A stretch of DNA of 64,000 nucleotides from Ostrea edulis. Lineage: Eukaryota. Location: assembly GCF_947568905.1 (NCBI RefSeq), contig NC_079171.1, positions 47,678,001 to 47,742,000 of the forward strand. Direction: 5' to 3'. Numbering within the stretch: position 1 is the first letter of the stretch; every line of letters starts with the position of its first letter. The translations under genes were made by a program, and so were the position numbers. This document shows, piece after piece, positions 14,033-55,069 of the stretch. The notes under the pieces are model-generated. The model saw only the letters and a program-made list of their open reading frames with translations, made no database searches and was not told where the DNA came from.

Positions 14033-14277
14033 ATCCAAATAGAAAGAGTTGATATCACACAGTCAAAATAATTCAATAAAAAAAGCAGGAAAATATACAG
14101 TTCCAAAATATATTTAAATCACTAGCGCTTTCTGGATTTTAACATCCATCCTCAGGTGAATACAAATTTGGATAGAAAAACACCCGAAACTTATCCCAAG
14201 AAATTTCTCAATGGAATCTATTATAGATTCCATAAAATTCATTTTGGAAAACAACACATTTAATTTTGATGGCGAAA

Positions 14278-18832: not shown

Positions 18833-18879
<47 letters not shown>

Positions 18880-21800
18880 TGAGTTGGTTGGGAGTCAATC
18901 AGTTCCTCTACATGCTATTAATTTTACTCTGCAAAACCCATGACGACTTTAAACATTTAAGATAACCGTCAATCATGCACTGTAATTTTACTTCGGTTCC
19001 CTACAAACAAAATGATCTGAGAATTTTCCATATAATTTTGAATAAAAACAACAATCGCTGCGCTGAATATACATTATGTATATATTTTAGTAAGAAATTT
19101 TGCTTACGTTAAAAGGATTATCAGTCCCCCTACGTCACAAGATTCTCACCCCCTACCCCACATGGGGTTTTTAGTCACATAATCGGCATACCATGATTTT
19201 TATTGGTTTCCTCAGTCGAATATTGAGTTCCCATTCAAAGGAAATGTTTCTGGTAGAAATGGTTTTGGACTTTATGCAGTAGAAATGAAGATTTCTCATT
19301 AAATACACCGAAAAATATACCTGGCGCCTACGCTACTTGTAGATTGTCGAAGTGTTTGAGTATTTCCAAAGAGTTCTAGACTCCCCAATTGTTAGTGCTA
19401 GCTTGTCAGTAACCAGTGTCTTTAGTGCAATACTTTCGGCTTTCTAGATTTATCTTAATTAAACACAATCAGTCTTTGAATACTTGTCGACCTACTTTCT
19501 TCGCTTCGAAATCACATCCGCGCGCTACACTGATCACGGTCCCCGCATGTGGCATTGTACACGGTGTACATTGTATCTGGGTTCTTTCTTCCACCAATAA
19601 AAACTGGGCGCCACCAAATAACTGAAAACATATTGAGTGTGGCGGAAAACATCAATTAATCAATCAATCATTCACACATCGATTCGATATTATCCATGTG
19701 AACTTCAAAGAAAACAAATTTGTCTGTTTCATACCTACATGTAGATATTTTATTGAAAATGGATATTAACAGCAAACTGTATGACAAACGGGACGATTTC
19801 AGCTTCTCCATCGTCAACTTTCTATAGTTATGTAGCAATATTCCATTATCACCTGCATATTGTTTTTATATCTCTCAATTGATTCGATACGCAAGGGCCT
19901 GTTCTGCGCATGTTCAGTTTTTATATCGAAGTAGGCTACTGGAACACAAGTTGATGGTACAGGGGTTTCAACAGTCGCGTTATTAAAATCACCATTTCGC
20001 AAATTTTATGGTCGTTACAACGATCTCCTTTGCCAATACAACCTATCATTGAGTCAAATAATGTCTGACGTGTTTTATACCGATTGGTAGACCGTTCTTG
20101 GCACACTGATTTTGACTAGAAATAGCTCCGTTTACCTGATCAAGATATAGGGTTTACGGCAGATGTGACCGGTCAAAAGGGGATGCTTACTCCTCCCGGG
20201 CACCTGATCCCACCTCTGGTATATTCAGGGGTCCGTGTTTGCCCAACTTTATGTTTTGTATAGCTTACAGGAGTTATGAAATTGATCACTGTTCGTTATC
20301 TTCGCCTTTCATGAAATTGATCGCTGTTCGTTATCTTCACTTTGCAAACAGGTCTGTATTAAGTTGTCTCAGCCAATTAATGTTGTATATTTTGGTCTAT
20401 GACGTCAGGTTTTTTGTTCTCATATATGTTTGTTTTTTTATTTCAAAGTTGCGGAATATAAATGTTATTTACAGATATGTCCAGAGAAGAAGTATGAGTA
20501 GGCATACGATATCATTGGAAACTCTTTGAAAACATGATGAATAAATATATTCTTTTAAGCGTCGACATGTGTTATATTGTAATGGGCATCAACTGATATA
20601 CACGTACAGACGTAAAGTTAGTCAATTTCTACTTGATATATTAAAAACCACAAACTATCGCATTGTCACGCCGTGAATCAATAATGCGATATTTCGATTT
20701 TGGGTTTTGTGTCTGTGGGCATCAGAGCTTATTATGGTAGGCTATTTAATATGTACTTTTAGGTCCTAGTGAATACACTACGCGGTTTGCTGGATTTTAC
20801 CTCTACGTATCCAACACTACGTCAAAGGATGACGGTCATCTGTGTTTCCATGAAATACAGAATGTGAACGGTACACCAGTAGAGAACCAGACGATAAGCT
20901 GTTCTGTTCATGGACAATATGTTATATACTACAACGAACGGAAACAGGGTGTTAACTATCCTAGTTTCTACTCACCAAACGCATTTAATGAACTGTGTGA
21001 ATTGGAAGTTTATGGTGAGTAGAACTGCCTCCTATTTCCCCTTAGTGCCGCATTGTGAGTTATTCAAAGCTGTATGACCCGATGTTCATGTATTATTTTT
21101 GTACATAATTACTTTAAAGCAGATTAATTACTTAATAAAGTTATTAACTTTTCCTTAATTACATGCTTGAAAACATCTGCATGTAAAAGAAAACAGTGAG
21201 AATATTATTTAGACAGCAAATATAGTGTGGTACATATATAATTATACAGTGTTAGACGTCTATAAATAGACACACGCGCATCAAGGTAATCCCAACATGA
21301 TGTATTAACTCATACGCAACTGTCTAGTTTTAAGGTTGAAAGAGCGTAATACAACGAATTACTAAGAGGTATTTGATATTTTTATTTCTATTAAACTTAT
21401 AGCACGGTATAGTTGTAACAAAGTACACAGCTTTACACTTGGCTATATTTAGATCTAAAACTTCATAGTTATTTCGGATTTCAAACATTTCGGTTGAGCA
21501 TCACTGAAGAGACATTATTTGTCGAAATGCGCATCTGGTGCATCAAAATTGGTACCGTATAAGTTTTACAGATAAGATCACCGATGATCTGAAAGTTTGA
21601 ACTGGTCACGTGACTGTCACTTGAAATGACAGAGTGATGCGGTTATTTGTAAACATCGATTTAAAATCAAACAATTTTGGTTAAAACAGGTGAAATAATG
21701 TATGATATGTCATACAGCCTCATAACTACATACGTGTGATGATTTAATAGCGTTTTTACGAGATGGAAAGATATTGTAATTCGGACCATACAGCTTTAAT

Positions 21801-24588
21801 TATGTACAATATAAAGAAAATTGAATATTTCTATGTCTTAATACAGGATGTCCCGACCCAAAATATTTTGGAGTGAATTGCGATCAACCGTGTCCCGACG
21901 GATGTCAAGAAAAAAGGTGTGACGTCATTACGGGCCATTGTCTGGGATGTATACCGGGTTATCAAGATCCTCGCTGTACCAAGGGTATGTGTACATGCAA
22001 ATGCTCAATGCTACCACAGCGCCCATCGAAAATTTTAGAACTAACTTTTTTTTTTAAATTCCACGTCTTTTTTGTCCGCATGTATTGTGGAGCTACGGGG
22101 CTGTTCCCTTCCCCAGGACAAACGAACAAAAAGTTTTACTTAAGTAACACATGTACTAACAAGGTTACCTTTAATTGACCTAATTAGAGGAGAAGGGGTG
22201 GGGTTTTTTTTACTACAGTGGGGACAGCACACCCTTGACCAAGTTTTTTTAATTACGAATACCCATCCCCCTTTTGACAGCTCTGGAAAAATAAAGCATG
22301 TATCAATGGCAGATTAAAGGGGGCGCAGCCGCACCCCCCCCCCTAAAATGTTCATATTTAAGGTAAATCGTGGTATTTTGTTTAGAAAAATGTACTAAAC
22401 GATAAAAGAAGCAATAATTTCTTCCAATCTTGGAGAAATAAATGACAAAATCTTTTGATTTCTTGAATTACTTTATTGGGAAAACTTTTCCAAAAACCCT
22501 TAAAATTTGCGTCAATTTATTAATTTCACCTTGTTAAAAATGATAGAAAATAGTACAAATGACTAAATAGGTGACATATTTCAAGCCCTATAAAATCTGT
22601 AATATCCAGGAGCTTCCGGGGGCTCCCCCCACACTGGGCCCCACCAGGGCTTCACCTTTGACCCCCTGTCTCATAAAGTGGCGCCCCCGTACATTTAACC
22701 GCGATTCCTGGATCCGCCCCTGTGTATGTCATTGTTCCTATTGAAGTGTTATATTTATGTTTACAGTTTCATATACATTATTAAGCTGTACTATCAATTG
22801 ATGGATTGAATACTGGTGATTATTTGTACATGGTCACAAGGATGATCTTGGAGGAAAATCAGCGGGTTTTAAATATCCTAATTCGATGTGGTAATGGATA
22901 GAAATGTTAGTCCAATGCGAATCCCTGTACATTATATTGACTTTAGGTATTTTCATATGGATTAAGAACCTAATATATTAACAACTAACATTAGTGCTGA
23001 TACATTGGCGGATCCAGATTGGGTTTCCTGAGGTCGGAAAGTCAGAAACTCCAACCCCCCCCCCCCTTTCATCAGAAAATTGTGCTTGAAAAGGTATCAA
23101 TAACGCATTTTTAGGATGACTCCCTTTGAAAGACCAAAGTTAATGGCAGAACCCCTCTTCCCTTTCAAACAATTCTGAATCTGTCCCTGCTGATATATAA
23201 AATTAAAGTTTAATGCAGAATTTCGGAAAGTTTTTTAGTATAAGCTGATACAAATTGATGATTTTTAATCTTTTCATAAATATTAAACATTTTTTCAATC
23301 AAAGATTGTTTTGTTGTTTGTTTTGGTGGGAGGGGGTATAGCTACTGATGAGTTTACACAAGCATTTACAAATCTTCTCAATGATTTTAACTTGCAAATT
23401 TAAAAAAAAAAATATGGTGGCCATGAGTCCGTTTCCATGTTGCTGGCGGTAAAACAGGAAATAATTATCAATTACGTTCATATTCTTTGTTCAAGGCTTG
23501 TTCTAATCAAATATCATATTTCATTACATATTCCGTGGGGATCCTGGTTAGAATAGGTCCTTTGTACCACTTGCTTCTCGTAAGAGACGAATACATCTTG
23601 AGACAAGGTTTATCAAACCAATGCTATAGCGTGAATTACCTAATCTTGCATGGTTATTGCATATACGGATGCATACTAGTATAATGTTTCTAATCTATTG
23701 TTAGCGTACTGTTGTCATTTAAAATTAATTAATCTAGTTTCCATTGTGCTTATACGGATCATATCATTTAAATTGTAAAGTGATCCCCAACGTTGAAGAC
23801 AACAACATTAACACCCGATATTTACTAATCAATACTAAAAGAGACAAACAGCTACAAATATATACAGGAGTGAAAACACAACCTCGCTCTTGTGGTTCCT
23901 GGAATCGAGAGATTCGGGGTTCCCACTTCCGGTAAAAAGGAACGGGTCCCCTGGCAAATCGCCCATATCATAATTTAGATAGCCAATTTCACTACATCCC
24001 CCTATTTTGGGGAGAAATGTTCCTATTCCGAAATAGAAAGATCCTACTCTGACAGATTCCGATGAACAACTAATATGATTACCGAAACCCCTCTCTGAAA
24101 ATTACACATTACACATTAATTAAAACAATACACAGATCAAAATAATCATATAATGGACATATATAAATTTTACCCTAAAATTAATTAAATTTTAACCTTA
24201 CGGACACACAATACATTATCGGAAATCCACGAACAGAAAAGCCACATCACAAAGACAAATGGAATGTCACACACAGTCCAAAGATACATGGAGCATTCTA
24301 CACGCACACATCTCAGAGCAGGGAATCAGATAGGCACATCACAGCCTCCAGTAACGACACACAAATAGGACTCCCCGCTTACCAACAGTGGGGCTATTCC
24401 TAACAAGGATTACATAAACTAGGAACACTCCCCATTTATACATGCATAAAAGATAGACTACCGGGTCCCTAAAAAAACCATCTTTAGTGCAACAACCTCC
24501 CGCACAACCAGTCCTGCTCATACCTCTGGTTTCCTTTGAGATCAGTCCCGAGCTTTATCCGACTATAGCGCAACCGAACTACAATTTG

Positions 24589-40600: not shown

Positions 40601-43600
40601 CAATCGAGAGCAAGTAGCTCAGAATTCAACAACCTTTATGCGAACACAAGTGATAATAAAACTGATAACAATGATTCACAAAGAGTAAACAATGCAAGCT
40701 TGGATAAATCAGAAGCGAATACAAGAGAAGACGACGTTGACATCGACGAGAAAGTTCACGAAGAAAATCCTTACGGAGACTTGGATATCAAAGAAGAAAT
40801 AATTCCAGACATCCTGTTATCAAAGCTGGAGGCAGCCATTGAAGAGAAACGGAGGGATGAAGATGATGGTTTTAAGAGGGAGTATGCAGTAAGGGAATTT
40901 ATAAATAGTATCATGTCTATAGGTACTGGGCTTAATTGATGTTTATGCAAACAATGAAATGATCATGCAGTAGTAAACGCACCTTGCATTTGAAGATAAA
41001 CTCCCTGAATATATTTTGTTTTGGCATTCCAGAATCTGCCTTATGGAGAGAGATTTCCTTGTAACAACGGTAAACTGCCAGAAAATATAACAAAGAACAG
41101 ATTCAAGACTACGTTTCCTTGTAAGTTCTACAACAGAATGTGTTAACTGAAATAAGTGAAGTGCATGCAATTTGCATTTTCGACACGTTGAATTGTTCTT
41201 TACAAAATGCAAGGACTATTGTAACATGGTGAAATTGAAATCCGACAGATTTGGGGTCAAAGTGAACGGAAAAGATCAAGATCGGTAGATTTATAATGTT
41301 ACAGGGTAGTATCATCTGAACAAGGTCTTCAGAGAATGCTTGTGCATATGTAGGGAGACACAAAATAATTTATTCTAATTAAGGTTTTTATCAACGATGT
41401 TTCTCTATAGGACAAGCACATAAAATTATATCCACTTTCAATTCTGAATTGATTTTTTTTTATAACTAGAAATCAACGGCTTGTAGTATCGGTTTTTTGT
41501 TGAATATAAAGCTTTCATGTTTCCCTTTAGTTTCTTACCTCACTACCTGGAATTTGGTATAGAGCACAGACAAACGTACACGTTCCCCGTGTTGTGTGTG
41601 TCCTTACTGTAAAGTTTTCCGATGGAGTGCAACTCCGTTAATTAAAAAGAAAGAATTTACAATATGAGGGGTCAGACCCAGGGATCCTTTCTGTAAAATA
41701 ATTATTATGCTGACTGTAAATAATTTTACAAAGTATTTTGGCCTTGTTTGAAACCTTGAAGCCAGGAACATATTTTACATTTTGTGTGCACTTTTTCAAA
41801 ATAATAGTCAGGGATTTGGCATAAAATGTGTCAATATCCTTACTACTATTATGACATAACACTTGTAAAATGTTACATTATTAAATGAATTATATACTAT
41901 TAATTGATTTTTCCTATTGCCTATAGACGACCATTCTCGCATCCAACTAAAAACGACTCCGTCTGACTATATCAATGCCAACTTCATTCACGTGAGTCTT
42001 CACCATCCATACTAAATGATGCATTTCAAATGCTATATCTTCTCTGAACTGACATTACAAGACTCCCCCATTCTTACTCTATCATTGTTATATAACTGGG
42101 ACCAAACAGGTAAGATCTGAATAGAGAAATTCATCAACAGATTAACTGTAATCGAATTCATACACTTAAATACAACTTATTTGACAGTTAATCAAAGCTT
42201 TAAATATTAGATTTCTTGTAGTGGATATTTTAATATTATTGTGTACTATAATAAATATATGCTTTGTCTCGTATTTGGACGTATATTATAATCTGGATTA
42301 CTAACTTAATTTTCATGACAATTAACAAGCAGGTTCTACAACATACATATACGTATATCACATCTATCACTGACTCTAGTATTGGTACGAACGGATTATT
42401 GATATGGGAGGTAACTGCAACATCAGGAGGAAACTCACGTGTTTGGGTGGGGAACCCAGAATGCGATGATATTAGCAAAATGCTGAATTGATAGTAACAT
42501 GTATATACTTATATTTTCAGGGCGTTGAGAGGATGAATGAATACATTGCATCACAAGGTTAGAGAAAAAGAAATAGCATGACATCAGAACTTTCAATTGT
42601 TTATAACTACACATCAATCTATCTCGACTCATGCGTTTACCCCCAAAAGGAAATATTCTATCAAGCAATCTATAAATGCTTGTTATATCATACAAAATGG
42701 TATTGGTTGGATACATGTGAATGGGTCGTTACAGTGACATGCAAATGAGAACAGTTTAAATTTCCTGATTATGGATTTTCCACAGGTCCTAAGCAAAACA
42801 CACTGTCAGACTTCTGGACAATGATTTGGCAGGAGAACGTGAGACAAATCATCATGCTGACTAACCTGAGGGAGGGTAATAAGGTATTGTCACATCATCT
42901 TAACATGGTTGTCTTTGGATACTTGCTAAATTGTGTTTCACCATAAGAATATGTAATGTTGGTAAAAACCTCTCTTAACGGAAAACAAACAAACCAAAAT
43001 AATTATATTCACTTTTTCCTACATATTTTTCGAAAATGAAAAGGAGAAGATAACGAACAGTGATCAATCTCATAAATCTTATAATCATAAAAGTGTATCC
43101 ATTGAAAACATCAATCCATGTCCTGTGGTGGCGTTGTTACAGAGATATACTTAAATGATTTACTTTTTCATATACAGGCAAAATGCGTGCAGTACTGGGC
43201 GGACATCGACGTACCTGCTACGTTTGGAGTGTTTTCTTTACGTACAGTAGAAGAGAAACATTACGCGTTTTATATAATCCGAACGTTCAGGGTCACTAAT
43301 AATGAGGTATGAATACAAGTGTATGTAACATATGTCTGAAATAGTTGTGCAAGTTATATCAATGCTTATATCTTGCTATTTTAAATCCCAATACCTATGT
43401 ATTACAAATATACAGATATTATTGCGCATGGAATGATAAGGTGTATGCTATGATAATGTAATATTATATTCTTGTCCACATGATATCAATAGGATGTGTT
43501 TCATCAAATTCAAATTTCGTTTGGTAAGCGAGCCGTTCGTTTTATGTTTATTACAATATTAAAATGATCTAGTGCGTATCACTTAAAGTTGCATAGGAAT

Positions 43601-46600
43601 AACCGTTTGGCTTTATAGTCATTCAATGGAAAACACTATGATAATAACAGTTAAATATTACCTGAAAATGTTAATTTACGCATAGAAAGAAATTCAGAAT
43701 ATCACGTGAACTCATTACAGTAACTTTAATATCACATAAAGTCTATATAACGGCACTATTCAAAAGTTGTCTTAGAACCCTAGCATGGTTTTATACACCT
43801 TAATCATTTGCTGACTATCAATATGATTGATAATTAGTTAAAAAAGACACACATGGTGACACAGTATCACTACACCGCCTGGCCGGATCACGGGACACCG
43901 GAACCGCTCTGTCTTGTCAATTTCCATGATCACGTGACGAGAACCAAAGATAAAGCTGATGTCGGTCCAACATTGGTACATTGCAGGTATATATATACAT
44001 GTGTTATATAGCAGACATAGGGGACTGAATTGGCTGATAATATATTTACAATAATATATACATATTATATACATATACATATTACCGCTACTACTATTAT
44101 TGCTACTATAATTACTACTATTACTGCTACTATTTCTAAAAATTCTAAAACTAAAAATAGCTATAATACTAAATTCAATACTACTAAAAGTTTAACAACT
44201 ACTGCATGAAATTCAACTATTGACATTTGAAGTACATGTGATGGCTATTATTTGTTAATCTAAATGCAATTCAATCCATATGCTTTTAAGTGTTTTCTGT
44301 GTGGGGATTCATCTCTTACATGCTATCTAGAGGAAAAGAAAGGAAATGTGTTACTCGTATGAAAAAAATAAAACAACTGTACTTTTAGTGCTGGTATCGG
44401 TCGCACGGGAACATACATCGCTATAGACGCTTTACATTGGGCTGGCAAGAAAGATAAGAAAATAAACATTGCAGAATACGTGAAGAAGATGAGAGAGAAC
44501 AGAATGAACATGGTGCAGACATATGTGAGTACAATTGATATATGTATTGTCGGTGATTGATTGTGAATGGTACTTAATGTGAAGCAAAATCAATTTACCA
44601 TTGCGTGCGGTTTCTTTCTGAGTTTAACAGGCATACGAATGATATAGGTGCTTTACATTACGTTAAAAGCCAGTAAGAAATTTAATTGCGAATATTTCAA
44701 AGAACATATGAATCTGAATATAATGTAATGATATCAAGTGTATATCTCATTCATAATTTGCATATTGTTCTCTATCACGTTCTTCCCAGGAGCAATACAG
44801 AAGCATTTTTCTGGCTCTGAATGATATGGTAAAAGCACCAACAGCTGTCCAGAAGAAAACGCAGTTTGTCCAAAAAGCAGAGGAAATTCAGAATGACAAA
44901 CCGGTGAATCAAAGTGACCTTGGTAAAGAATTCCAGGTGTGTAGTATCTTAACGAAGATTTTAATCACTCGATGATCGTAAAGATTATTTTGATGTTTAC
45001 ATTGCAATCCATACAAACATGGCTGTTTTTGAATTCGGACGGTGTATGATGCGCATGTATATAGATCAATCAATCAGTTTAGGCCTGGACAATTCTTCAG
45101 CATTAGATAATTACAGGATAATAATTTACTGTGGCTTTAAACATGTGGGCTTACATTATCTACAGGTTCCAGGTTGGTTGGTTGGATGTATAATGTTTAA
45201 CGTCTCATTAGATACTTTTTCACTCACATGGAGACGTCACCATTGCCGGTGAAGGGCTGTAAAAGTATGGCTATCATCGGCGCTTACGGTCTTTGAGCAG
45301 GGAGGGATCTTTATTGTGCAACACCTGTTGTAAAACGGGGCCTCCCAATTTAGTCACCATTTACAACAAGAAAAAGGGTACTTATAATATATTCTAACCT
45401 GATCACCTCGAGGAAATGTTATAAAAGTCGAATAATAATTTTTTATTGTCTTTTTTTTCCGGAATAAGTGATTTGTTTTATTCTTTGAGATGGCGATGAC
45501 AAAATTAGAAATAACTATGAAAGTAAATTTAGAGATCGACCTATAATCTTTTCTTCTGCAGAAAAATTAAGCTGGTAGCTCAGAAATAACATGGCAAATA
45601 ATTCAGTACACTTTTCTTATAGAAGCAATGCTAAGTATCTCAAATAATTAATCACAGTTGTTCCCACCCCTGTCGTTTTAAAGGTTCTGTGTTTACCTTG
45701 CTTGGATTCTTAATAGATCATTTTTTCCAACAGAATATGTTCGAATTTCAACTTTTGTACTCATACAGTCTATCGGTCGCTTGTATGCTTTTTTTGTTTA
45801 TGATGTAATTCACAAATACAAGATGTCATTAAGTTGAGTATCGCCTTATGTATTTCATACCAATTGTTGGATCATTCTTTACATACTGATTTTGAATACG
45901 GAATACTACGTTTTAATGATCATGGGTAGATCAAAATTCATCTGGTATATACAGGAGTCCAGGTTTGCCAAACTCTAAATTCTGTAATCTTTGAATGATT
46001 CATGATTTTTTTTTCTTACAAGTTTATTATTATTTCGGGTTTCCAATATTTTAGCTTGAATATCGCTGAAGAGACTTTATTTATCGACATGCGCATCTAG
46101 TAAATCAAAATTGGTACTGTATAAGTTTTACATTACGACCACTGGGTCGAGACCTCTACTGGTGGACTGTTAGTCCCCGGAGGGTCTCTACAGCCCAGAA
46201 GCTAAGTACTTCGTTACTACATGTAGCTTGAAAATACGGATATATATTTAATTGCTTTAATAAAATTTAGAAATATATTTCAAACTTGAGATTAACTCCC
46301 TCATGCATAGCTCTGATCCGTAGACGAATTTGACTNNNNNNNNNNNNNNNNNNNNNNNNNNNNNNNNNNNNNNNNNNNNNNNNNNNNNNNNNNNNNNNNN
46401 NNNNNNNNNNNNNNNNNNNNNNNNNNNNNNNNNNNNNNNNNNNNNNNNNNNNNNNNNNNNNNNNNNNNNNNNNNNNNNNNNNNNNNNNNNNNNNNNNNNN
46501 NNNNNNNATCTTTATTTCCATTATTTCAGCTTGAGCAACACTGAAGAGACATCATTTGTCGGGGGGCCTCCGTGTCCGAGTGGTTAGAGCATCACGCTCA

Positions 46601-49600
46601 CAATCACACGGCCTCTCACCTCTGGCCGGCGCGGGTTCGAATCCTGCTCGCGCCGGTAAGTGAGAAAGTTTCCCAGTTTGCTTTCGGAAGGTCGGTGATC
46701 TTTTCCCAGGTACATTGTATCTGGGTTCTCTCTTCCACCAATAAACACTGGACGCCACCAGATTACTGAAAAATTGTTGAGTGTGGCGGAAAACATAAAT
46801 CAATCATTTGTTGAAAAGCAGCTGATGCGTCAAAATTGGCACAGTATAAGTTTTACATTACGACCCCTGAGTCGAGGCCTCTGCTGGTGGACTGTTAGTC
46901 CCCTAGAGTCTCCACATCCCTGTAGCTAAGTGCTTCGTTACTAGCTTGAAAGTACGGATGTATATTTAATTACTGTGATACAATTTAAAAATTCATTTCA
47001 AAATTAAGGATTATCTCCCTCATGCATAACTCTTATCCTTAGACGATCTTTTGCACTCTAGTTTATTTTTGTTACAAATTTATTGTTATTTTTGATTTAC
47101 AATATTTCAGCTTGAGCATCAATGATGAGCCATTATTTGTCGAAATGCGCATCTGGTGCATCAAACTTGTTACCGTACATGAGATTGATCGTTTTATTTA
47201 CTTTTTCGTACATATTTATCGAAAATAAAACGGTGAAGATAGCGAACATTGATCACTCTCATTACTCCTATACGGAAATGGAGTGGTCCGTAGTCAGAAT
47301 CAATGTGTCAATTATAGTACATGTAGCCCGGAAAGCATATAAATGCATTGTTATTGAAAAGCAGTAATACATGTATAGTGGGATAAACGCATCTAAACAA
47401 TTAATAAACCTTTGATAACATATTAAGGATACGGTACACTGATTGTAAAGTACTTTGAAAGTATTCATACACGTGTATCATTCCGTGGGGATCCGGGTTA
47501 GAATAGGTCCTCAGTACATGTACCCCTTGGTTGTCGTAGAAGGCGACTAAATGGGGCGGTCCTTCGGATGAGACCGCAAAAACCGAGGCCCCGTGTCACA
47601 GCAGGTGTGTCACGATAAAGATCCCTCCCTGCTCAAAGGCCATAAGCGCCGAGCATAGGCTGAAATTTTGCAGCCCTTCACCGGCAGTGGTGACGTTTCC
47701 ATATGAGTGAAATATTCTCGAGAGGGACGTAAAACAATATTCAATCAATCAATACACGTGTATCAGTATGTCAAATTCCATTTCAGACTCTCATGAAAGT
47801 GAGACCTTCCTATACGGATGCAGATTACAAGTTCGCACTACAATCAGGAAGCGACAGAACCAGAATTCTCCCACGTATGTTAGCCTCAATGTTAATCTAA
47901 TTTGTTTCCTGTTAAAGTCAGAAAAATAACGAAACAGACTTTGTCTACGTATGTTAACATTCAATCTAATTTGTTTAAGAATTCAATTGGCAACATGTAG
48001 AGCAAATATAATACATAAAGTTCATCCTATATCCTTATGACGTCTAAGATTCTACATCAAATGTTTTAATTTTTTTTCCAGTTGACAAATACAGTCTCTA
48101 TCTCTCCTTTAGTGGAGGAAAGCGCGGGAACTACATCAATGCTATCTCTGTTCCTGTAAGTATCATGTTCTGCACTTCATGCCTCTAAATACATAAACAG
48201 TACAGCTTAAGAATGTCTAGGAATGGGTCATTGCCCATAGACATATCTCTTTGTCACAGTATTGCATCTCATGACACACAGAAGAAAATATCAAATTTTA
48301 CATATATTATTTGATGATAGAATGATACGTACTTAAGAACATGCGGCACGATGTGGCCAAAATAACTAGTCAATGAATATTTTTTTATTTTTTTTCATGA
48401 AGCACCATCAGGATGTCCTGTACAATGTGTATAAATTTCAAGGCCACTTTCTAGGTATACAAAGGAGATAATAAGCTTTGAATTACCCCCTTTTCGAAAA
48501 TTGAATTTTACAAGATCATTCCAATTTTTAATTAAACGATAATCTTTAGAATATATGCAAAATATAAAATATATAATAATAACATGCTTTAACATAACCA
48601 TATAATAAGAAATTGGGAAAATTGAAGGATTTGAGGTGGAAATTAGTACTAAAAAACAGGGTAGTCCAGATACTAAATGAAGCACTGCTCAAAAATCTCT
48701 CAATGAATTTTTTTTTTTGCAAACACTGCAATTAAAAGCTATTCATATACCTAACTTCCTGTAGAAATATGAAGGAGTGAAGCTAATCTTGATTTTGAGC
48801 TAGGCGTTCTTGAAGTTATACATTGATATGTTCTCTTGGGGTTAGGCTTGGCGAAATATTTGTTATTGATAACTTTCAAGCTTATATTCTTTTCATGTAT
48901 AACTACAGCTGTACTGTTAAAAGTAATGGGAGAGAGGACAGTCTCAATTTATTTGCACTACCAAAAAAAATTCCCATTGTCAAAAACGAAGGGGGGGGGG
49001 GGCAGCCTAATTCTTCGTGCCTGTTTTGGAATATATTGTTACAAACTATATTTGTTTTGAACCTATTGAAATATTTAGAATTTTCATGATTATGGAACAA
49101 ACATTGAGTTACTGAAAACAAATTAAAATTGATTTTTTTTAAAATATACATGTATGTATTAAATATGGCTTCGAACAAAACGTCCAGTCCAGCTTTATAA
49201 CGTCTTCTTTCAAACCACGGGTTAGGTATAGTTAACGTCAATATAAGCTCCTACTTTCTGTACAAGATCAACACCATTTCCGCGGCCATGGTAGCTAATA
49301 TCGCTTGACTCGATCGTCTTCATGTATTTTTCAAGGTATTTAGGCTATGTGACGCACATGTTGTGACTATGCACCTTTTTCTTTTTTACATGTCTGCTTC
49401 TCGCTTATATTCCGACGTGTGTCATATTTCTTACATAGTTTCACAGTAGTTACCATTTCCGGAGCAGTATTTCGTAAAGTTAGTAAAAATAATTTGGAAT
49501 ATGAAATAGTTTGAGAGATAAAGCGTACTTATATTTTAATAAAAATGCTTGCAAAAATTCAACATTCCTAGTATGGAAGTTAATATTTGAACAAAAGTAA

Positions 49601-52600: not shown

Positions 52601-55069
52601 ATGATATATACTAAGTTTGAACTCAACTGAAAATGAACACTGCTGGTTAGCTTTAACTAATTTTGCAGACAAATGTCGAAGCCCGATCTATTACGATTGT
52701 TGAGCCACAACTCCAATTGCAAGCAGGGCGGGGAACAACACAGATGCTAAGTCTTTTGAGATTCGCTCTTAGCAGTAGAGCTGAAGGACCCATAACTGTT
52801 GTCAGCAGGTAAACTAGTTATTATTGAAATTTGCAAATACCTCGTATAGCGAATGTTTTCAAATGCATTTATCGTTTGGATTAAATTCGGTACCTAGAGT
52901 TTTGTAGCTCAAATGAGCTGAAGGTTTATGTGAACTTTTATCCAGCATTCGTTTATCCATGGGTCTGTAAACTTGTAACATTTTGGACTTCTTCTCCACA
53001 ACCAAAGAATCAATTTTAACCACACTTGCCATATAGCATCCTTGGATCCAATGAAGAATTAAACATTTTTTTTTTCATAAGGGAGATAAATGTATTGATG
53101 GAATAGTGAAATATGGTTACATCTTTTAGAAATTTTCTCCAGAATCAATGGGCTCTGATAAGTCATACTATTATGCAAGCATCCGTTAGGTAGTGCAAAT
53201 TCGAATGGATTTTCTCTGTGACCAACAAAGGTAAGATGTTAAATTCTACCTAGGATTATCTTGGGGAAACATTCTCTGAAGAACAGAGGGATCATATCAA
53301 TGTGCAAGCATTCCAGATAGAACAAATTCAAGTTTTATTCAAATGTTGGCGCACGAAAGTGCGGAAAGGCCATAATATGAAATTGAAGTTTTACGTAGAA
53401 ATAGATATAGATAGGATCAAATATTCACCTCACCCACAGCAGGACCATCGTATCAATTACAATCATCGGTAGAAAGTTTAAATTCAAGTGGGTTTTTTTT
53501 TATTTCAGCCCCCCACCCCCACCCCGGGGGGTAGGGTTTGGCCACAATATGATATTAAACTATTATTCGGGAATACATAGGGATTTGATTAAACTTAAAT
53601 TCTTTTGAAGACTGACAAGGCCACACGAAATCAAAAAATTTGTCTGGAATCAAATGTTCTTTTATGATAAAGAGGATATAGTCGTAGGGATTAATTTTTA
53701 TTCAGTTCTGGTTGTCTGGCCGAAATTTTAACCCTTTTCATAACATTTAAATGGTGAGGGATTCGACTCTCATATTCCATATGTAAAACTTATACGGTAC
53801 CAATTTTGATGCACCAAATGCGCATATGTGTTTTGTTTGTGACATGACTTTTCCTTTGCTACAAACCTTGTGATAAAGCCCTTGGAGTTTAGGTTACAAT
53901 TAAGAAAACGTGACCTAAACAGTCTTAATTATGTAAGGAAGGTTTTTTGTATATTGCATAGCGATTTTTATGGCTACTGACAAAAAAGTAGATGGTACAG
54001 GGGTTTCAACAGTCTCGACTGCAATCAGCATTTCGCAAATTCTATGGTCGTTATAACGATGTAGTTCGTCAATACAGCCCATCATTATGTCAAATGCTGT
54101 CTAACATGTTTCATACCGATTGTTAATTCGTTCTTGGCACATTGATTTTGACTACGAATAACTCTGTTTACCTGATCAGGACATAGGACTCACGGCCGGT
54201 GTGACCGGTCGACAGGGGGTGCTTACTCACCCTTGGCACCTGATCCCACCTCTGGTGTATCCAGGGTTATGAGATTGATCACTGTTCGTTATCATCACTT
54301 TTCATGGCAAGATCAATCGATTCATACCGTGAACTTTGACCTTGTGATACTGACGTTGGAGTTTAACCTACAAGTTGGTTGGGTTTTTTTCCAGAATATT
54401 AACTCCAGGATTAAGTTGGATATTTTTTCATAATGCATGTATGTAGGAAAGAAAATACTTTCAAAAGTATTCTCCAGCAGCGAAAGGTCATGTTACACAT
54501 ATTGGTAGTAATAAATCCATAGGATTTTTTAATTCAACTTCGGCTATGCCGTGATCCTTTGGGGCTAGGTTTCGGCACAATATAGGGTCAAACTTTTTCA
54601 TATAGATATAAAATATATTTTTTACCAGAAAAGGTACATAACAGCAGGATCAGTATGTCTCAGTTGAGCGATGTGGTACATCGATCTCTTGTTTTCTATT
54701 GTAGAGATGGTGCAACTCTTTGTGGTGTGTTCTGTGCCGCACATAATGTTCTACAACAGTTGTCGATGGACGGGGAGGTCGACATTTTCTCTGCCGTCCG
54801 GCAACTCCACGTCAGACGTCCAGAACTCTGCTCTAGTTTGGCAAGTTAAATCCTGGCTTCATTATACAGACAAAATGGGCATTTATCAATAATGTTGTCA
54901 TTTCACTCCATTATTCATCAATAATAATTTTACAAAAGAAAAATATATAATGAACAACCATTATGATTTCTCATGACAGGAAGAGTACAGGATGATCCAC
55001 GATGTTGTATTGCACTACATCCGGTCACGTGAAGGTCACTTAGAGGAGAATATATATTCAAACCAGTGA
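6799..55069 (+). CDS. Receptor-type protein tyrosine phosphatase with F-type-lectin-like domain, EGF/laminin-EGF repeats, TM helix and tandem PTP domains (26 coding exons, 1099 aa)
   Basis: Manual splicing of exons 6799-6853, 9431-9655, 20763-21014, 21847-21984, 32840-32977, 36484-36624, 36758-36895, 36970-37073, 37309-37418, 39752-39828, 40599-40888, 41033-41120, 41927-41991, 42521-42557, 42786-42883, 43178-43306, 43838-43986, 44389-44524, 44790-44936, 47787-47874, 48082-48155, 51232-51366, 51598-51717, 52669-52808, 54705-54840, 54980-55069 gives 3300 nt, open, with matching phases. Motifs: [62 protein letters not shown]. Confidence 0.93.
9431..9655 (+). CDS. PTP exon 2: F-type-lectin-like domain, N-half
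   Basis: [13 protein letters not shown]...GAEKAVDG...QCTIS...[21 protein letters not shown]; AG/GT boundaries. Confidence 0.92.
10821..11400 (-). mobile_element. Penelope-like element 3' fragment: C-terminal GIY-YIG endonuclease plus hammerhead-bearing tail
   Basis: ORF 11072-11383 [36 protein letters not shown]...LFNPSLN; ends at (GATA)n about 10802-10820. Confidence 0.85.
10867..10909 (-). ncRNA. Minimal type I hammerhead in PLE 3' region
   Basis: Minus strand ACTGC-CTGATGA-A-CCATG(TAGA)CATGG-A-GAA-A(GCGC)T-A^GCAGT; about 160 nt downstream of the GIY-YIG stop; A-A mismatch at 10.1/11.1. Confidence 0.7.
11500..11642. repeat. Foldback hairpin; similar short foldbacks at 6933-7073, 8874-8998, 31259-31338, 58861-58984, 60758-60826
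   Basis: CATACCCATTTCCATATCACACCCTGTATCAGCCC / GGGCTGATACAGGGTGTGGTATGGAAATGGGTATG. Confidence 0.85.
11703..12086 (-). mobile_element. Crypton-like tyrosine-recombinase element fragment (N-terminal SAM-like region)
   Basis: [19 protein letters not shown]...[43 protein letters not shown] resembles Crypton/DUF3504-associated proteins; adjacent foldback 11500-11642. Confidence 0.7.
13782..13938. repeat. GC-rich palindrome, 67-bp arms
   Basis: ATTACTACAGTAACTTGATCCGAAGAG...TCAGATCA / TGATCTGA...CTCTTCGGATCAAGTTACTGTAGTAAT. Confidence 0.9.
14034..14277. mobile_element. Rearranged PLE fragment between (TA)n tracts: RT piece on +, hammerhead on -
   Basis: + strand [23 protein letters not shown] at about 14195-14277; hammerhead 14119-14159 in inverse orientation. 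Confidence 0.65.
14119..14159 (-). ncRNA. Minimal type I hammerhead with U10.1-A11.1 pair
   Basis: Minus strand TCAC-CTGAGGA-TGGAT(GTTAAA)ATCCA-GAA-A(GCGC)T-A^GTGA. Confidence 0.7.
15285..15620. repeat. Diverged foldback element (MITE-like)
   Basis: GGATACTACTTA...GGATTCCCTGTCTAT...CGTTTCACTTTTT mirrored by AAAAAGTGAAACG...ATAGACAGGGAATCC...TAAGTAGTATCC. Confidence 0.8.
17382..17473 (+). pseudogene. tRNA-like sequence (SINE head or tRNA pseudogene); similar heads at 34852-34918(+) and 62390-62462(-)
   Basis: TGGCCGAGTGG A box and GGTTCGACTCC B box but no pairing acceptor stem. Confidence 0.55.
17543..18835 (-). mobile_element. 5'-truncated Penelope-like element (RT C-half, GIY-YIG, hammerhead) inserted in (TA)n
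   Basis: YDDALG...VNYLDVTL...SNHPPSI...NITWFNPPY, then with stops/frameshift CPLNGEC..HGIVYLA...[16 protein letters not shown]...[20 protein letters not shown]; (TA)n on both sides. Confidence 0.88.
17642..17695 (-). ncRNA. Type I hammerhead in PLE 3' region
   Basis: Minus strand TTTCTC-CTGACGA-GTGAAGGG(AGCTATC)CCCTTAC-GAA-ACAG(C)CTGT-A^GAGAAA; GUA triplet; downstream of GIY-YIG coding remnant. Confidence 0.8.
20763..21014 (+). CDS. PTP exon 3: F-type-lectin-like domain, C-half
   Basis: [24 protein letters not shown]...[15 protein letters not shown]...[10 protein letters not shown]; AG/GT. Confidence 0.92.
21498..21541 (+). ncRNA. Minimal type I hammerhead ribozyme, intact
   Basis: GCATCA-CTGAAGA-GACA(TTATT)TGTC-GAA-A(TGCGCA)T-C^TGGTGC: stem I 6 bp, core CUGAAGA/GAAA, palindromic stem III, predicted cleavage after C21535. 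Confidence 0.85.
21847..21984 (+). CDS. PTP exon 4: EGF/laminin-EGF repeat
   Basis: [43 protein letters not shown]; phase 1-1. Confidence 0.92.
22305..22722. mobile_element. MITE with GGCGGATCC-type termini; related element 23005-23190
   Basis: Ends CCTGGATCCGCCCCTG; degenerate left end ATGGCAGATTAAAGGGGG. Confidence 0.55.
23774..28702 (-). mobile_element. Degenerate Ty3/Gypsy LTR retrotransposon, internally deleted
   Basis: LTRs 23774-23996 (TG...CA) and about 28459-28702; PBS 28441-28458; PPT AAAATAGGGGGA at 23997-24008; gag-like 27480-27941; [11 protein letters not shown] and [14 protein letters not shown] (RT end); [17 protein letters not shown] (RNase H); YVRVCGVC...[17 protein letters not shown] (integrase). 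Confidence 0.88.
29050..30080. repeat. Tandem array of about 8 units (125-150 bp), each with hairpin AAGTAGGTCA-C.G-TGACCTACTT
   Basis: Hairpin motif at about 29126, 29271, 29415, 29567, 29696, 29822, 29949, 30051, with shared CATCAAACTTTGTCAGTTGATG. Confidence 0.85.
32126..32300. repeat. Local 92-bp tandem duplication
   Basis: CGGGAT(T/C)TACGTCCGAGACCATCAATGCC...CTTGACACAGCG at 32126 and 32218. Confidence 0.92.
32840..32977 (+). CDS. PTP exon 5: EGF/laminin-EGF repeat
   Basis: [43 protein letters not shown]; phase 1-1. Confidence 0.92.
34307..34640 (-). mobile_element. LINE RT-region fragment between (TA)n tracts
   Basis: [44 protein letters not shown] (K-A/S-GPD motif preceding non-LTR RT). 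Confidence 0.75.
34995..35862 (+). mobile_element. PLE with C-terminal RT and no downstream endonuclease (Naiad-like, inferred), 3' part
   Basis: [25 protein letters not shown]...FRYIDDVLS..., ending VFHTDC* followed by a conserved ~220-nt 3' region. Confidence 0.85.
36484..36624 (+). CDS. PTP exon 6: EGF/laminin-EGF repeat
   Basis: [44 protein letters not shown]; phase 1-1. Confidence 0.92.
36758..36895 (+). CDS. PTP exon 7: EGF/laminin-EGF repeat
   Basis: [43 protein letters not shown]; phase 1-1. Confidence 0.92.
36970..37073 (+). CDS. PTP exon 8: last, partial EGF-like repeat
   Basis: [34 protein letters not shown]; GTAAGT donor. Confidence 0.9.
37309..37418 (+). CDS. PTP exon 9: transmembrane helix
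   Basis: [37 protein letters not shown]; only the AG at 37307-37308 keeps frame. Confidence 0.85.
37445..38733 (+). mobile_element. Helentron-associated non-autonomous element (HINE-type) carrying about 5 tandem ~165-bp satellite units
   Basis: TTTTTAGCTCACCTGAGCTGAAAGCTCA start, GTCC microsatellite, AAGAACC recurring at about 37706, 37869, 38035, 38201, 38367, 38531, end CTCAGGTGA.CGATGTGGCCCATGGGCC..TTGTTT. Confidence 0.8.
39752..39828 (+). CDS. PTP exon 10: juxtamembrane
   Basis: [25 protein letters not shown]; phase 2 to phase 1 bridges exons 9 and 11. Confidence 0.75.
40599..40888 (+). CDS. PTP exon 11: acidic juxtamembrane region
   Basis: ...NNLYANTS...EENPYGDL...[10 protein letters not shown]; part of ORF 40427-40939. 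Confidence 0.88.
41033..41120 (+). CDS. PTP exon 12: start of D1
   Basis: [29 protein letters not shown]. Confidence 0.92.
41927..41991 (+). CDS. PTP exon 13 (D1)
   Basis: [22 protein letters not shown]. Confidence 0.92.
42521..42557 (+). CDS. PTP exon 14 (D1, 37 nt)
   Basis: [12 protein letters not shown](G). Confidence 0.9.
42786..42883 (+). CDS. PTP exon 15 (D1)
   Basis: [33 protein letters not shown]. Confidence 0.93.
43178..43306 (+). CDS. PTP exon 16 (D1)
   Basis: [43 protein letters not shown]. Confidence 0.92.
43838..43986 (+). CDS. PTP exon 17 (D1, WPD loop and catalytic Cys)
   Basis: [27 protein letters not shown]...GPTLVHCS. Confidence 0.94.
44389..44524 (+). CDS. PTP exon 18 (D1, P-loop and Q-loop)
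   Basis: [15 protein letters not shown]...[12 protein letters not shown]. Confidence 0.94.
44790..44936 (+). CDS. PTP exon 19 (end of D1, D1-D2 linker)
   Basis: [12 protein letters not shown]...SDLGKEFQ. Confidence 0.92.
46336..46507. other. Assembly gap (172 N)
   Basis: Run of n, inside the hammerhead tandem repeat. Confidence 1.
46562..46802 (+). mobile_element. tRNA-derived SINE, full length, with TSD
   Basis: A box GTCCGAGTGG, B box GGTTCGAATCC, (AATC) tail; TSD ATCATTTGT(C/T)G at 46551-46561 and 46803-46813. Confidence 0.85.
47481..47751 (+). mobile_element. Second SINE family (Deu/Nin-like core, (TCAA)n tail, no tRNA head); other copies 10625-10800(-), 12503-12720, 23532-23600, 45180-45345(-), 52187-52335, 57768-58010, 60240-60450
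   Basis: 14-bp TSD ATACACGTGTATCA (47467-47480 and 47752-47765); CTTCGGATGAGACC..AAAACCGAGG...GATAAAGATCCC recalls the Deu/Nin SINE domain from memory. Confidence 0.8.
47787..47874 (+). CDS. PTP exon 20 (D2)
   Basis: [29 protein letters not shown]. Confidence 0.88.
48082..48155 (+). CDS. PTP exon 21 (D2)
   Basis: [25 protein letters not shown]. Confidence 0.9.
51232..51366 (+). CDS. PTP exon 22 (D2)
   Basis: [45 protein letters not shown]. Confidence 0.9.
51598..51717 (+). CDS. PTP exon 23 (D2), GC donor
   Basis: [40 protein letters not shown] then GCAAGT. Confidence 0.85.
52669..52808 (+). CDS. PTP exon 24 (D2)
   Basis: [14 protein letters not shown]...[10 protein letters not shown]. 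Confidence 0.88.
52905..54695 (+). mobile_element. Old degenerate copy of the same HINE-type element filling most of intron 24, with nested fragments
   Basis: TAGCTCAAATGAGCTGAAGG at about 52905; CTCAGTTGAGCGATGTGGTACATCGATCTCTTGTTT at about 54658-54695. Confidence 0.6.
54705..54840 (+). CDS. PTP exon 25 (D2), GC donor
   Basis: [45 protein letters not shown] then GCAAGT. Confidence 0.9.
54980..55069 (+). CDS. PTP exon 26: last coding exon
   Basis: [29 protein letters not shown]. Confidence 0.9.
   Translation, partial: EEYRMIHDVVLHYIRSREGHLEENIYSNQ

What the first reader, a model, noticed from the sequence alone, without database searches (positions are those of the whole stretch)
21498..21541. 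Intact minimal hammerhead ribozyme, sense-oriented, in intron 3 of the receptor phosphatase
Seen: all core nucleotides (CUGAAGA, GAAA), a G-C closed 4-bp stem II, a 6-bp stem I and a stem III reduced to the palindrome A-UGCGCA-U, with an AUC cleavage triplet. It is on the strand transcribed as PTP pre-mRNA, about 310 nt upstream of exon 4. Established: such minimal type I hammerheads in PLEs and metazoan retrozymes cleave mainly as dimers through the palindromic stem III. Inference: the pre-mRNA may be cut here when a second copy is available, either another retrozyme RNA in trans or the copies at 46-47 kb in the same pre-mRNA. That could affect splicing or yield of this receptor.
Basis: partly seen in the sequence, partly recalled or inferred. 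Interest (0 to 1): 0.72.

Follow-up and report, generated by a model that had tools for sequence, protein, structure and literature searches.

The report
Solo retrozyme hammerhead in phosphatase intron
The hammerhead ribozyme motif is real and intact, but it is one 132-base truncated copy of a very abundant mobile repeat (a bivalve "retrozyme") that landed inside another transposon in a short intron, and nothing found here shows that it affects the phosphatase gene.

Summary
Window 21498-21541 (+) has every hammerhead core base, stems I and II, a palindromic stem III and an AUC cleavage triplet. Rfam Hammerhead_1 scores it 31.2 bits (cut-off 34) when the short stretch is searched alone.

It is not a gene-specific element. 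It lies in a 132-nt insertion (21439-21570), a 5'-truncated copy of a 351-nt tandem retrozyme. The exact 44-mer occurs 5,537 times in this 895-Mb mollusc genome, and 15,075 times with up to 3 mismatches. Young insertions share a 3' end 35-38 nt (one at 43) past the cleavage site and have scattered 5' ends, as Penelope-like elements do.

The copy sits inside a MITE-like repeat that fills an 832-nt intron, and its 5' junction is unique in the genome. The intron lies between + strand exons, with tyrosine-phosphatase exons downstream, so the ribozyme is sense-oriented, 311 nt before the next exon.

Cleavage of the pre-mRNA is untested, because only assembled contigs were available. Folding disfavours the active fold for a lone copy, and published work shows that slow intronic hammerheads do not block splicing.

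This scan has already reported the family many times on other DNA of this genome. Verdict: ordinary remnant of a known kind.

The parts
21498..21541 (+). Type I hammerhead ribozyme motif: stem I, CUGAAGA, 4-bp stem II, GAAA, palindromic stem III AUGCGCAU, and the AUC triplet
   Evidence: Sequence read. Rfam RF00163 31.2 bits, full model. Pairs listed.
21535..21536 (+). Predicted self-cleavage site (after C21535), 311 nt upstream of the next exon
   Evidence: Position of H17 in the motif; distance computed. Cleavage itself was not tested.
21439..21570 (+). 132-nt 5'-truncated retrozyme insertion. It covers monomer positions 255-351 plus 1-35, where position 1 is the first base after the cleavage site.
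   Evidence: BLAST to a natural monomer from locus L028. 97-99% identical to many genomic copies. The 5' junction is unique in the genome.
21061..21438 (.). Left part of the MITE-like host repeat interrupted by the retrozyme copy
   Evidence: At least 1,736 first-look candidates (a rough figure); all 39 scored non-self hits end at 21438 or a few bases short of it. Other copies are contiguous across the site. Imperfect terminal inverted repeats at 21061-21082 and 21781-21802.
21571..21809 (.). Right part of the same host repeat
   Evidence: At least 1,839 first-look candidates (a rough figure); scored hits start at 21571. Empty-site copies read ...CTTTACAC-A-GATAAG....
21015..21846 (+). 832-nt phase-1 intron (GT..AG), about 90% of it the host repeat plus the retrozyme copy
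   Evidence: Splice signals and reading frames. Inferred from sequence, with no RNA support.
20750..21014 (+). Upstream exon (5' limit not determined), possibly discoidin/F5-F8-C-like
   Evidence: Open frame. Atlas lead at 0.90-0.91 (weak). No Pfam hit.
21847..21984 (+). Downstream exon, cysteine-rich and EGF-like, phase 1-1
   Evidence: Open frame and GT donor at 21985. No Pfam hit.
41908..42012 (+). Tyrosine-phosphatase domain exon (DYINAN motif)
   Evidence: Pfam PF00102 21.2 bits; motif scan.
43838..44008 (+). Tyrosine-phosphatase domain exon (WPDHGTP ... VHC)
   Evidence: Pfam PF00102 35 bits, E 1.5e-8.
46104..47153 (+). Older, degenerate array of the same retrozyme lineage. It is interrupted by an N run, which was left untouched. 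Both of its hammerheads carry core mutations.
   Evidence: 82-87% identity to the monomer. GACA replaces GAAA at 46 kb and AUGA replaces CUGA at 47.1 kb.
53781..53825 (-). About 45-nt extreme 5'-truncated copy: stem III remnant plus an intact 36-nt 3' end, with no ribozyme core

Best explanation
The motif is a sequence-intact type I hammerhead carried by a young, 5'-truncated, single-ribozyme copy (132 nt) of a 351-nt non-LTR retrozyme. That retrozyme is a non-coding retroelement that normally sits in head-to-tail arrays and is thought to be mobilised by Penelope-like elements.

The family's insertions start at a fixed 3' end 35-38 nt past the ribozyme cleavage site and stop at variable 5' points. 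This is what target-primed reverse transcription of a multimeric or circular RNA would leave (inferred). This copy entered a MITE-like repeat that had already filled a short intron, at a target (TTTACA|GATAAG) resembling the element's own 3' end.

With one ribozyme only, the copy cannot release a unit-length RNA, so it is dead on arrival as a retrozyme. Transcribed within the intron, it may occasionally self-cleave, alone or paired through its palindromic stem III with abundant retrozyme RNA. The intron is short and the ribozyme is probably slow, so the expected effect on the phosphatase mRNA is negligible (inferred, not measured).
For: Motif: (RF00163 31.2 bits, full length).

Family size: exact 44-mer 5,537 times, 15,075 times with up to 3 mismatches, reversed controls 0.

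Arrays: 351-nt period with 2 to 5 or more ribozymes in L015, L021, L028 and others.

Insertion ends: the 3' ends of 31 non-duplicate young insertions fall at monomer positions 35 (12), 36 (10), 37 (4), 38 (4) and 43 (1). The 5' ends are spread over positions 1-326. A target-site duplication is seen in only one clear case, L024, 10 bp. The window also holds a copy of about 45 nt that keeps only the 3' end.

Nested, in-situ insertion: the host repeat is contiguous in other copies, the 5' junction is unique in the genome, and the 3' junction is shared only with an independent insertion in another copy of the host repeat (L011).

Youth: 97-99% identity to dozens of copies.

Expression of the family: a 321-nt contig in a metatranscriptome and a 232-nt contig in an RNA-seq run carry the monomer sequence.

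Folding: the hammerhead fold is -7.7 kcal/mol against an MFE of -13.2. P(stem I) is 0.001-0.005 and P(stem III) about 0 in 132-420-nt contexts. Two copies cofold into a double hammerhead at -35.3 kcal/mol.

Literature: metazoan retrozymes, and mussel repeats of 350-390 bp with kobs about 0.1 per min (PMC7229834). PLE 5' truncation, partial tandems, 30-40-bp tail and hammerhead near the 3' end (PMC8557442). Slow intronic hammerheads do not block splicing (PMC2995048, PMC10919898).
Against: No cleavage assay and no raw RNA reads, so activity of this copy is neither shown nor excluded. Nearest-neighbour folding ignores the tertiary contacts that drive hammerhead folding, and it also gives a low stem I probability in tandem arrays that are presumed active, so it is weak evidence against activity. 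The Rfam score is 2.8 bits under the curated cut-off. No autonomous Penelope-like element sharing this 3' end was found among 34 GIY-YIG loci. The 30 loci used for the insertion-end statistics were picked as best matches to this copy, and an unbiased sample could not be fetched. Whether the insertion is fixed or polymorphic is unknown.
Confidence: 0.8

Rival explanations
1. One reading: the sense-oriented ribozyme cuts the nascent phosphatase pre-mRNA, alone or as a dimer with another retrozyme RNA, and thereby lowers splicing or mRNA yield.
For: The core is intact and in sense orientation. The palindromic stem III allows a stable double hammerhead with any other family RNA, and family RNA is present in RNA libraries. 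There is a precedent for an intronic ribozyme tuning its host gene (Cpeb3, PMC10919898).
Against: Only 311 nt separate the site from the next exon in an 832-nt intron, so there is little time before splicing. Related mussel ribozymes are slow, about 0.1 per min (PMC7229834). Slow intronic hammerheads leave splicing intact (PMC2995048, PMC10919898). The predicted active fold of a lone copy is rare. The 46-47 kb partners lie 25 kb downstream. The copy is a young transposon remnant with no sign of conservation. Earlier unchecked notes of this scan list several other sense-intronic intact copies, which suggests tolerance.
Confidence: 0.08
2. The ribozyme fragment did not insert here. It was carried in passively as part of a composite host transposon that already contained it.
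For: L011 shows the same host repeat with a retrozyme at the same site.
Against: The host-to-retrozyme 5' junction occurs once in the genome at up to 3 mismatches. The 3' junction occurs only twice, and the second copy has a different 5' end and length, 503 against 132 nt. The best 40 host-repeat copies all lack the insert.
Confidence: 0.02
3. The locus is a source of retrozyme RNA: read-through transcription of the intron yields a processed or circular retrozyme RNA.
For: Retrozymes are thought to lack promoters and to depend on read-through transcription (PMC7761336). The copy is sense to a gene.
Against: There is only one cleavage site and 132 of 351 nt, so no unit-length RNA can be excised.
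Confidence: 0.03
4. A chance or non-ribozyme match to the hammerhead consensus.
For: The loose core pattern alone is not enriched in the window: 5 found, 3.07 expected. The whole-window Rfam search found nothing.
Against: Full-length RF00163 alignment with all pairs standard, E 9.3e-7. 5,537 identical copies set in 351-nt tandem arrays typical of retrozymes.
Confidence: 0.01

Closest known systems
Metazoan non-LTR retrozymes (Cervera and de la Pena 2020, PMC7229834), especially the 350-390-bp repeats of the mussel Mytilus galloprovincialis
   Same: Non-coding tandem monomers of about 350 nt, low GC (39%), one type I hammerhead per unit, thousands of copies, and sequence present in RNA libraries. 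Helix III is 2 bp capped by a tetraloop, as described for invertebrate motifs.
   Different: The copy in question is a solo, 5'-truncated 132-nt fragment, not an array. Circular RNA was not shown here. The loop of stem III is palindromic (GCGC), so it also fits the dimer-type motifs. Sequence homology to the mussel element was not tested here.
Penelope-like elements and their minimal hammerheads (PMC8557442, PMC7761336)
   Same: Strong 5' truncation, partial tandems, a fixed 3' end a few tens of nt past the ribozyme, target-site duplications mostly absent, insertions into (TA)n, and a palindromic stem III allowing dimers. PLE fragments with hammerheads lie in the same window.
   Different: No RT or GIY-YIG reading frame in the 351-nt unit. 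No autonomous PLE sharing its 3' end was found. The PLE hammerheads in the window have a 1-bp helix III (GAAA-GCGC-UA) and different stems.
Conserved intronic ribozymes of vertebrates (HH9/HH10 hammerheads; the Cpeb3 HDV-like ribozyme, PMC10919898)
   Same: A self-cleaving motif in sense orientation inside an intron of a protein-coding gene.
   Different: Those are single-copy, conserved over long evolutionary spans, and (for Cpeb3) kinetically matched to a 10-kb distance to the next exon. This one is a recent repeat copy, 311 nt from the exon, with no conservation evidence and no match to the HH9/HH10 models.
Amphibian satellite 2 / axolotl retrozyme hammerheads
   Same: The Rfam type I consensus, which shows the palindromic motif GAAACGCGCGUC, aligns column for column with GAAAUGCGCAUC here. 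Predicted double-hammerhead dimer.
   Different: Different host phylum and monomer sequence. Helix III here can form 2 bp instead of 1.

Membership tests
Hammerhead ribozyme, type I (Rfam RF00163) | Conserved core C3-U4-G5-A6-N7-G8-A9 ... G12-A13-A14, the A15.1-U16.1 pair, and H17 not G | tested here: met
   CUGAAGA ... GAAA ... U-C at 21504-21535.
Hammerhead ribozyme, type I (Rfam RF00163) | Three helices around the core, with the open end in helix I | tested here: met
   Stem I has 6 bp (plus 4 more past a bulge), stem II has 4 bp, and stem III is 2 bp or an 8-bp intermolecular duplex.
Hammerhead ribozyme, type I (Rfam RF00163) | Score at or above the curated gathering threshold (34 bits) | tested here: not met
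   31.2 bits, E 9.3e-7, on 21488-21552. Not reported at all in the larger searches.
Hammerhead ribozyme, type I (Rfam RF00163) | [quoted passage not shown] | not testable with these tools
   Only assembled contigs were available, and they cannot show RNA ends.
Metazoan non-LTR retrozyme | Head-to-tail repeats of 150-450 bp, each with a type I hammerhead | tested here: met
   Met for the family: 351-nt period, with up to 5 or more units in L015, L021 and L028. The window copy itself is a single 132-nt fragment.
Metazoan non-LTR retrozyme | Low GC (under 45-50%) and no LTR or coding capacity | tested here: met
   Monomer GC is 39.3%. The units abut directly with no flanking long repeats. 351 nt is too short for an RT. 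PBS and PPT were not scanned for explicitly.
Metazoan non-LTR retrozyme | Expressed as unit-length linear and circular RNA | tested here: inconclusive
   RNA-library contigs of 321 and 232 nt carry the monomer sequence. Circularity and ends cannot be seen in contigs, and DNA carry-over is not excluded.
Non-autonomous derivative of a Penelope-like element | PLE-style insertions: common 3' end, variable 5' truncation, partial tandems | tested here: met
   30 of 31 3' ends fall at positions 35-38, and 5' ends range over 1-326. The sample is biased towards matches to this copy.
Non-autonomous derivative of a Penelope-like element | 3' end or pLTR sequence shared with an autonomous PLE of the same genome | tested here: not met
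   No similarity beyond incidental insertions in 34 GIY-YIG loci. The search was far from exhaustive: 150 of 1,102 candidates were scored and 30 of them fetched, plus 4 regions picked by hand.
Exapted, conserved intronic hammerhead (HH9/HH10 type) | Match to the HH9/HH10 models, and conservation at an orthologous position | tested here: not met
   No HH9/HH10 match on 21488-21552. The copy is 97-99% identical to paralogous repeats. Orthologous genomes were not available.

The most novel reading that the evidence does not exclude
Solo sense-oriented hammerheads scattered in introns are activated in trans. Abundant retrozyme RNA pairs with them through the shared palindromic stem III (AUGCGCAU), forming double hammerheads that cut host pre-mRNAs. 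Bursts of retrozyme expression would then lower the output of many genes, this receptor phosphatase among them.
Probability: 0.04. Interest if true: 0.7.

Novelty: new member of a known kind. Interest (0 to 1): 0.24.

Why it matters
For the gene, probably very little: this is a recent transposon remnant in a transposon-filled intron.

For the family, the copy is a clean, datable example of how animal retrozymes integrate. They share a fixed 3' end 35-38 nt past the ribozyme site, show random 5' truncation, and twice hit the same nucleotide of a target that resembles the element's own 3' end. This supports mobilisation by Penelope-like machinery, starting from an internal site of a multimeric or circular RNA and not from ribozyme-cut ends.

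With thousands of intact ribozymes, many of them in introns, this genome would suit a genome-wide test of whether sense intronic hammerheads are selected against.

Tried and rejected
- **Rfam on large stretches.** The whole window at gathering score and 451 nt at E<=10 gave no hammerhead. Only the 65-nt search scored it, so the blanks were filter artefacts.
- **RF00163 over the whole genome**. Only 73 of about 85,000 candidates were scored, so it says nothing about this family.
- **Chance motif.** Rejected.
- **Passive carriage inside the host repeat.** Tested and rejected.
- **Pairing with the 46-47 kb copies.** Rejected on distance. Both have dead cores, although both keep the palindrome.
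- **Autonomous partner.** 34 GIY-YIG loci were searched by BLAST and a motif scan, and none shares the retrozyme sequence. My motif scan was strict and would miss hammerheads with a mismatch at the base of stem II.
- **RNA ends.** All runs offered are contigs. No begin/end table and no locus-specific evidence resulted. The depth ratios there are not interpretable.
- **Pfam on the two flanking exons.** No hit.
- **The N run near 46.3-46.5 kb** was left as it is.
- **No consensus of the repeat was built.** A natural monomer from L028 served as reference.

Full report
**1. The observation**

On the + strand, 21498-21541 reads as follows: GCAUCA, CUGAAGA, GACA-UUAUU-UGUC, GAAA, UGCGCA, UC, UGGUGC.
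- All invariant hammerhead positions are present.
- Stem II has four pairs and is closed by G-C.
- Stem I has six pairs, one of them G-U. It can continue for four more pairs (21494-21497 with 21543-21546) past a bulged A.
- Stem III is the palindrome AUGCGCAU. It can form two pairs capped by GCGC within one molecule, or eight pairs between two molecules.
- Cleavage would fall after C21535.

The whole-window Rfam search and a 451-nt search reported no hammerhead. Searching 21488-21552 alone gave RF00163 Hammerhead_1 over its full 45 positions at exactly 21498-21541. The score was 31.2 bits (curated cut-off 34), E 9.3e-7, with no non-standard pair. The earlier blanks were therefore filter losses. 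The loose core pattern alone is not enriched in the window, but the complete 44-mer is far beyond chance, as section 2 shows.

**2. What it belongs to**

The motif lies in a repeat also present at 46.0 and 47.1 kb.
- A genome search with 21432-21575 returned dozens of copies at 97-99% identity, matching only query positions 7-140.
- The 30 fetched loci often hold two to five or more identical hammerheads spaced 351 nt apart.
- I used a natural cleavage-to-cleavage monomer from L028 as reference. Against it, the window copy is monomer positions 255-351 followed by 1-35, which is 21439-21570, 132 nt.
- The exact 44-mer occurs 5,537 times in the 895-Mb genome, and 15,075 times with up to three mismatches. 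The reversed control gives none.
- The monomer has 39% GC.

This is the architecture of metazoan non-LTR retrozymes, described from a coral, a mussel (350-390-bp units) and the axolotl (PMC7229834, PMC7761336). The scan's own notes show that this family has already been reported many times elsewhere in this genome.

**3. How the family inserts**

Among 31 non-duplicate young insertions, the 3' end lies at these monomer positions: 35 (12 cases), 36 (10), 37 (4), 38 (4) and 43 (1). The 5' ends are scattered from 1 to 326, with a small cluster at 255 (four loci plus the window). A clear target-site duplication appears only once, 10 bp in L024. Several insertions sit in (TA)n. The window also holds a copy of about 45 nt at 53781-53825 (-) that keeps only the 3' end.

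A common 3' end with variable 5' truncation and partial tandems is the signature reported for Penelope-like elements. Those also carry hammerheads near their 3' ends and a 30-40-bp 'tail' (PMC8557442).

My inference is that cDNA synthesis starts at a defined internal site about 35 nt past the ribozyme site, on a multimeric or circular RNA, and not at ribozyme-cut ends.

Two incidental insertions, in L043 and at 53.8 kb of the window, show the same 3' end.

**4. The local setting**

The DNA on both sides of the insertion is another high-copy repeat. The first look counted about 1,700-1,800 candidates on each side, which is a rough figure, and 40 were scored on each side. All scored copies end at 21438 or a few bases short of it, or start at 21571. 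Several are contiguous elsewhere and read ...CTTTACAC-A-GATAAG.... This host repeat has imperfect terminal inverted repeats at 21061-21082 and 21781-21802, so it looks like a MITE.

The host-to-retrozyme 5' junction is unique in the genome. The 3' junction occurs twice. The second case is an independent insertion (503 nt, different 5' end) at the same nucleotide of another host-repeat copy. So the copy inserted where it is and was not carried in by the host repeat. The target TTTACA resembles the element's own 3' end, TTTTACA.

**5. The gene**

Open frames on the + strand end at a GT donor (21015) and resume after an AG acceptor (21846), in phase 1. That gives an 832-nt intron, about nine tenths of which is the host repeat plus the retrozyme copy.
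- The downstream exon (21847-21984) is cysteine-rich and EGF-like.
- The upstream exon is possibly discoidin-like, on a weak Atlas lead.
- Tyrosine-phosphatase exons are confirmed on the + strand at 41908-42012 and 43838-44008 (Pfam PF00102).

The exon numbering, and the link between the ectodomain-like exons and the phosphatase exons, rest on sequence alone. The exons were examined one by one and were not joined.

**6. Does it act on the pre-mRNA?**

This could not be tested. All public runs offered were assembled contigs, which cannot show RNA ends. They do show family sequence in RNA libraries: a 321-nt contig in a metatranscriptome with one mismatch to the window copy, and a 232-nt contig in an RNA-seq run.

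Folding results:
- The hammerhead fold of the lone copy is -7.7 kcal/mol, against an MFE of -13.2.
- In the MFE fold, AUGCGC pairs with GUGCAU and the cleavage site sits in the loop.
- In contexts of 132-420 nt, stem I has probability 0.001-0.005 and stem III about 0.
- Two copies cofold into a double hammerhead with an 8-bp stem III at -35.3.
- In a natural tandem, the inter-unit stem III has probability 0.3-0.4.

These models ignore tertiary contacts, so they are only indicative.

From the literature:
- The related mussel ribozyme cleaves at about 0.1 per min (PMC7229834).
- Introns cut by a slow hammerhead are still spliced normally, and only fast ribozymes abort processing (Dye 2006 and Fong 2009, as described in PMC2995048 and PMC10919898).
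- The one well-studied regulatory intronic ribozyme sits about 10 kb from the next exon (PMC10919898).

Here the next exon is 311 nt away in a short intron. The copies at 46-47 kb have dead cores (A13 to C, and C3 to A). They lie 25 kb downstream, so they cannot help in time. Trans pairing with abundant family RNA remains possible.

I put the chance of a measurable effect on this gene at under 10%.

**7. Comparison and verdict**

The motif works like, and nearly scores as, a type I hammerhead. The repeat meets the structural definition of a metazoan non-LTR retrozyme and inserts like a Penelope-like element, although no autonomous partner was found in 34 GIY-YIG loci. It is not like the conserved intronic hammerheads of vertebrates.

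The finding is a correct reading of an ordinary, recent transposon remnant. It is a new member of a known kind, already met repeatedly by this scan. Earlier notes also list other sense-intronic intact copies (unchecked), which argues for tolerance more than for function.

Noticed in passing
window 10867-10909 (-) and 14119-14159 (-); ORF 11075-11425 (-): Two PLE-type minimal hammerheads (CUGANGA, 5-bp stem II, GAAA-GCGC-UA, 4-5-bp stem I), antisense to the gene. The first lies 170 nt downstream of a GIY-YIG-like ORF (Pfam 22.4 bits, cut-off 22.6). Its family has at least 890 first-look candidates. Copies end 51 or 69 nt past the cleavage site and often occur as inverted pairs. Rfam gives no hit for either.
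   Followed up: partly
window 17642-17695 (-); ORFs 17966-18187 and 18368-18898 (-): A third hammerhead type: RF00163 at 25.7 bits, with a long stem II and a near-palindromic stem III (ACAGCCUGU). It lies downstream of ORFs that read by eye like a PLE RT C-terminus and a GIY-YIG linker, though Pfam did not confirm them. Its family has at least 452 first-look candidates at about 90% identity.
   Followed up: partly
L011 (G000:C4:86031435-86034571) compared with window 21438/21571: An independent retrozyme insertion (503 nt, 5' end at monomer position 221) at the same nucleotide of another copy of the host repeat. The target TTTACA|GATAAG resembles the element's 3' end TTTTACA, which suggests microhomology-guided targeting.
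   Followed up: partly
L012, L013, L023 and window 21439: Four insertions with unrelated flanks start at the same monomer position (255, TTGGCTATAT). Three of them (window 132 nt, L013 133 nt, L023 134 nt) are near-identical short copies, and two more short copies start nearby (L005 136 nt at 251, L022 139 nt at 248). L012 is a 489-nt copy with the same start. This may be a preferred stop of reverse transcription or a short subfamily.
   Followed up: no
window 21527-21545 (+): An alternative 6-bp hairpin, AUGCGC/GUGCAU, places the cleavage (and ligation) site in its 5-nt loop. It dominates predicted folds of the solo copy and of the circular monomer, and might act as a ribozyme-off conformation.
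   Followed up: partly
window 21010 to 21843 (run X8, table 5): One DNA-run contig at single-copy depth joins these two points, skipping 832 nt, which is exactly the intron's length. The joint is shifted by 4 nt, so it would read in frame with Thr in place of Tyr. It could be a paralogue lacking this intron. Exon 3 has many paralogues, to judge from depth.
   Followed up: no
window, whole (against 60, 63): Methodological: Rfam searches of 451 nt or more missed hammerheads that score 26-31 bits when 65-81 nt are searched alone. Short AT-rich ribozymes are lost in the speed filters.
   Followed up: yes
window 14770-15002 and 19110-19331: Long inverted repeats (66-72 nt pieces, 86-99% complementary) lie about 4.1-4.4 kb apart and enclose the PLE-like ORFs at 17.9-18.9 kb. 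They may be an inverted PLE pair or a DNA transposon.
   Followed up: no
window 37628-38687 and 29067-30020: Tandem arrays with periods of about 165 nt and about 128 nt, of unknown family.
   Followed up: no
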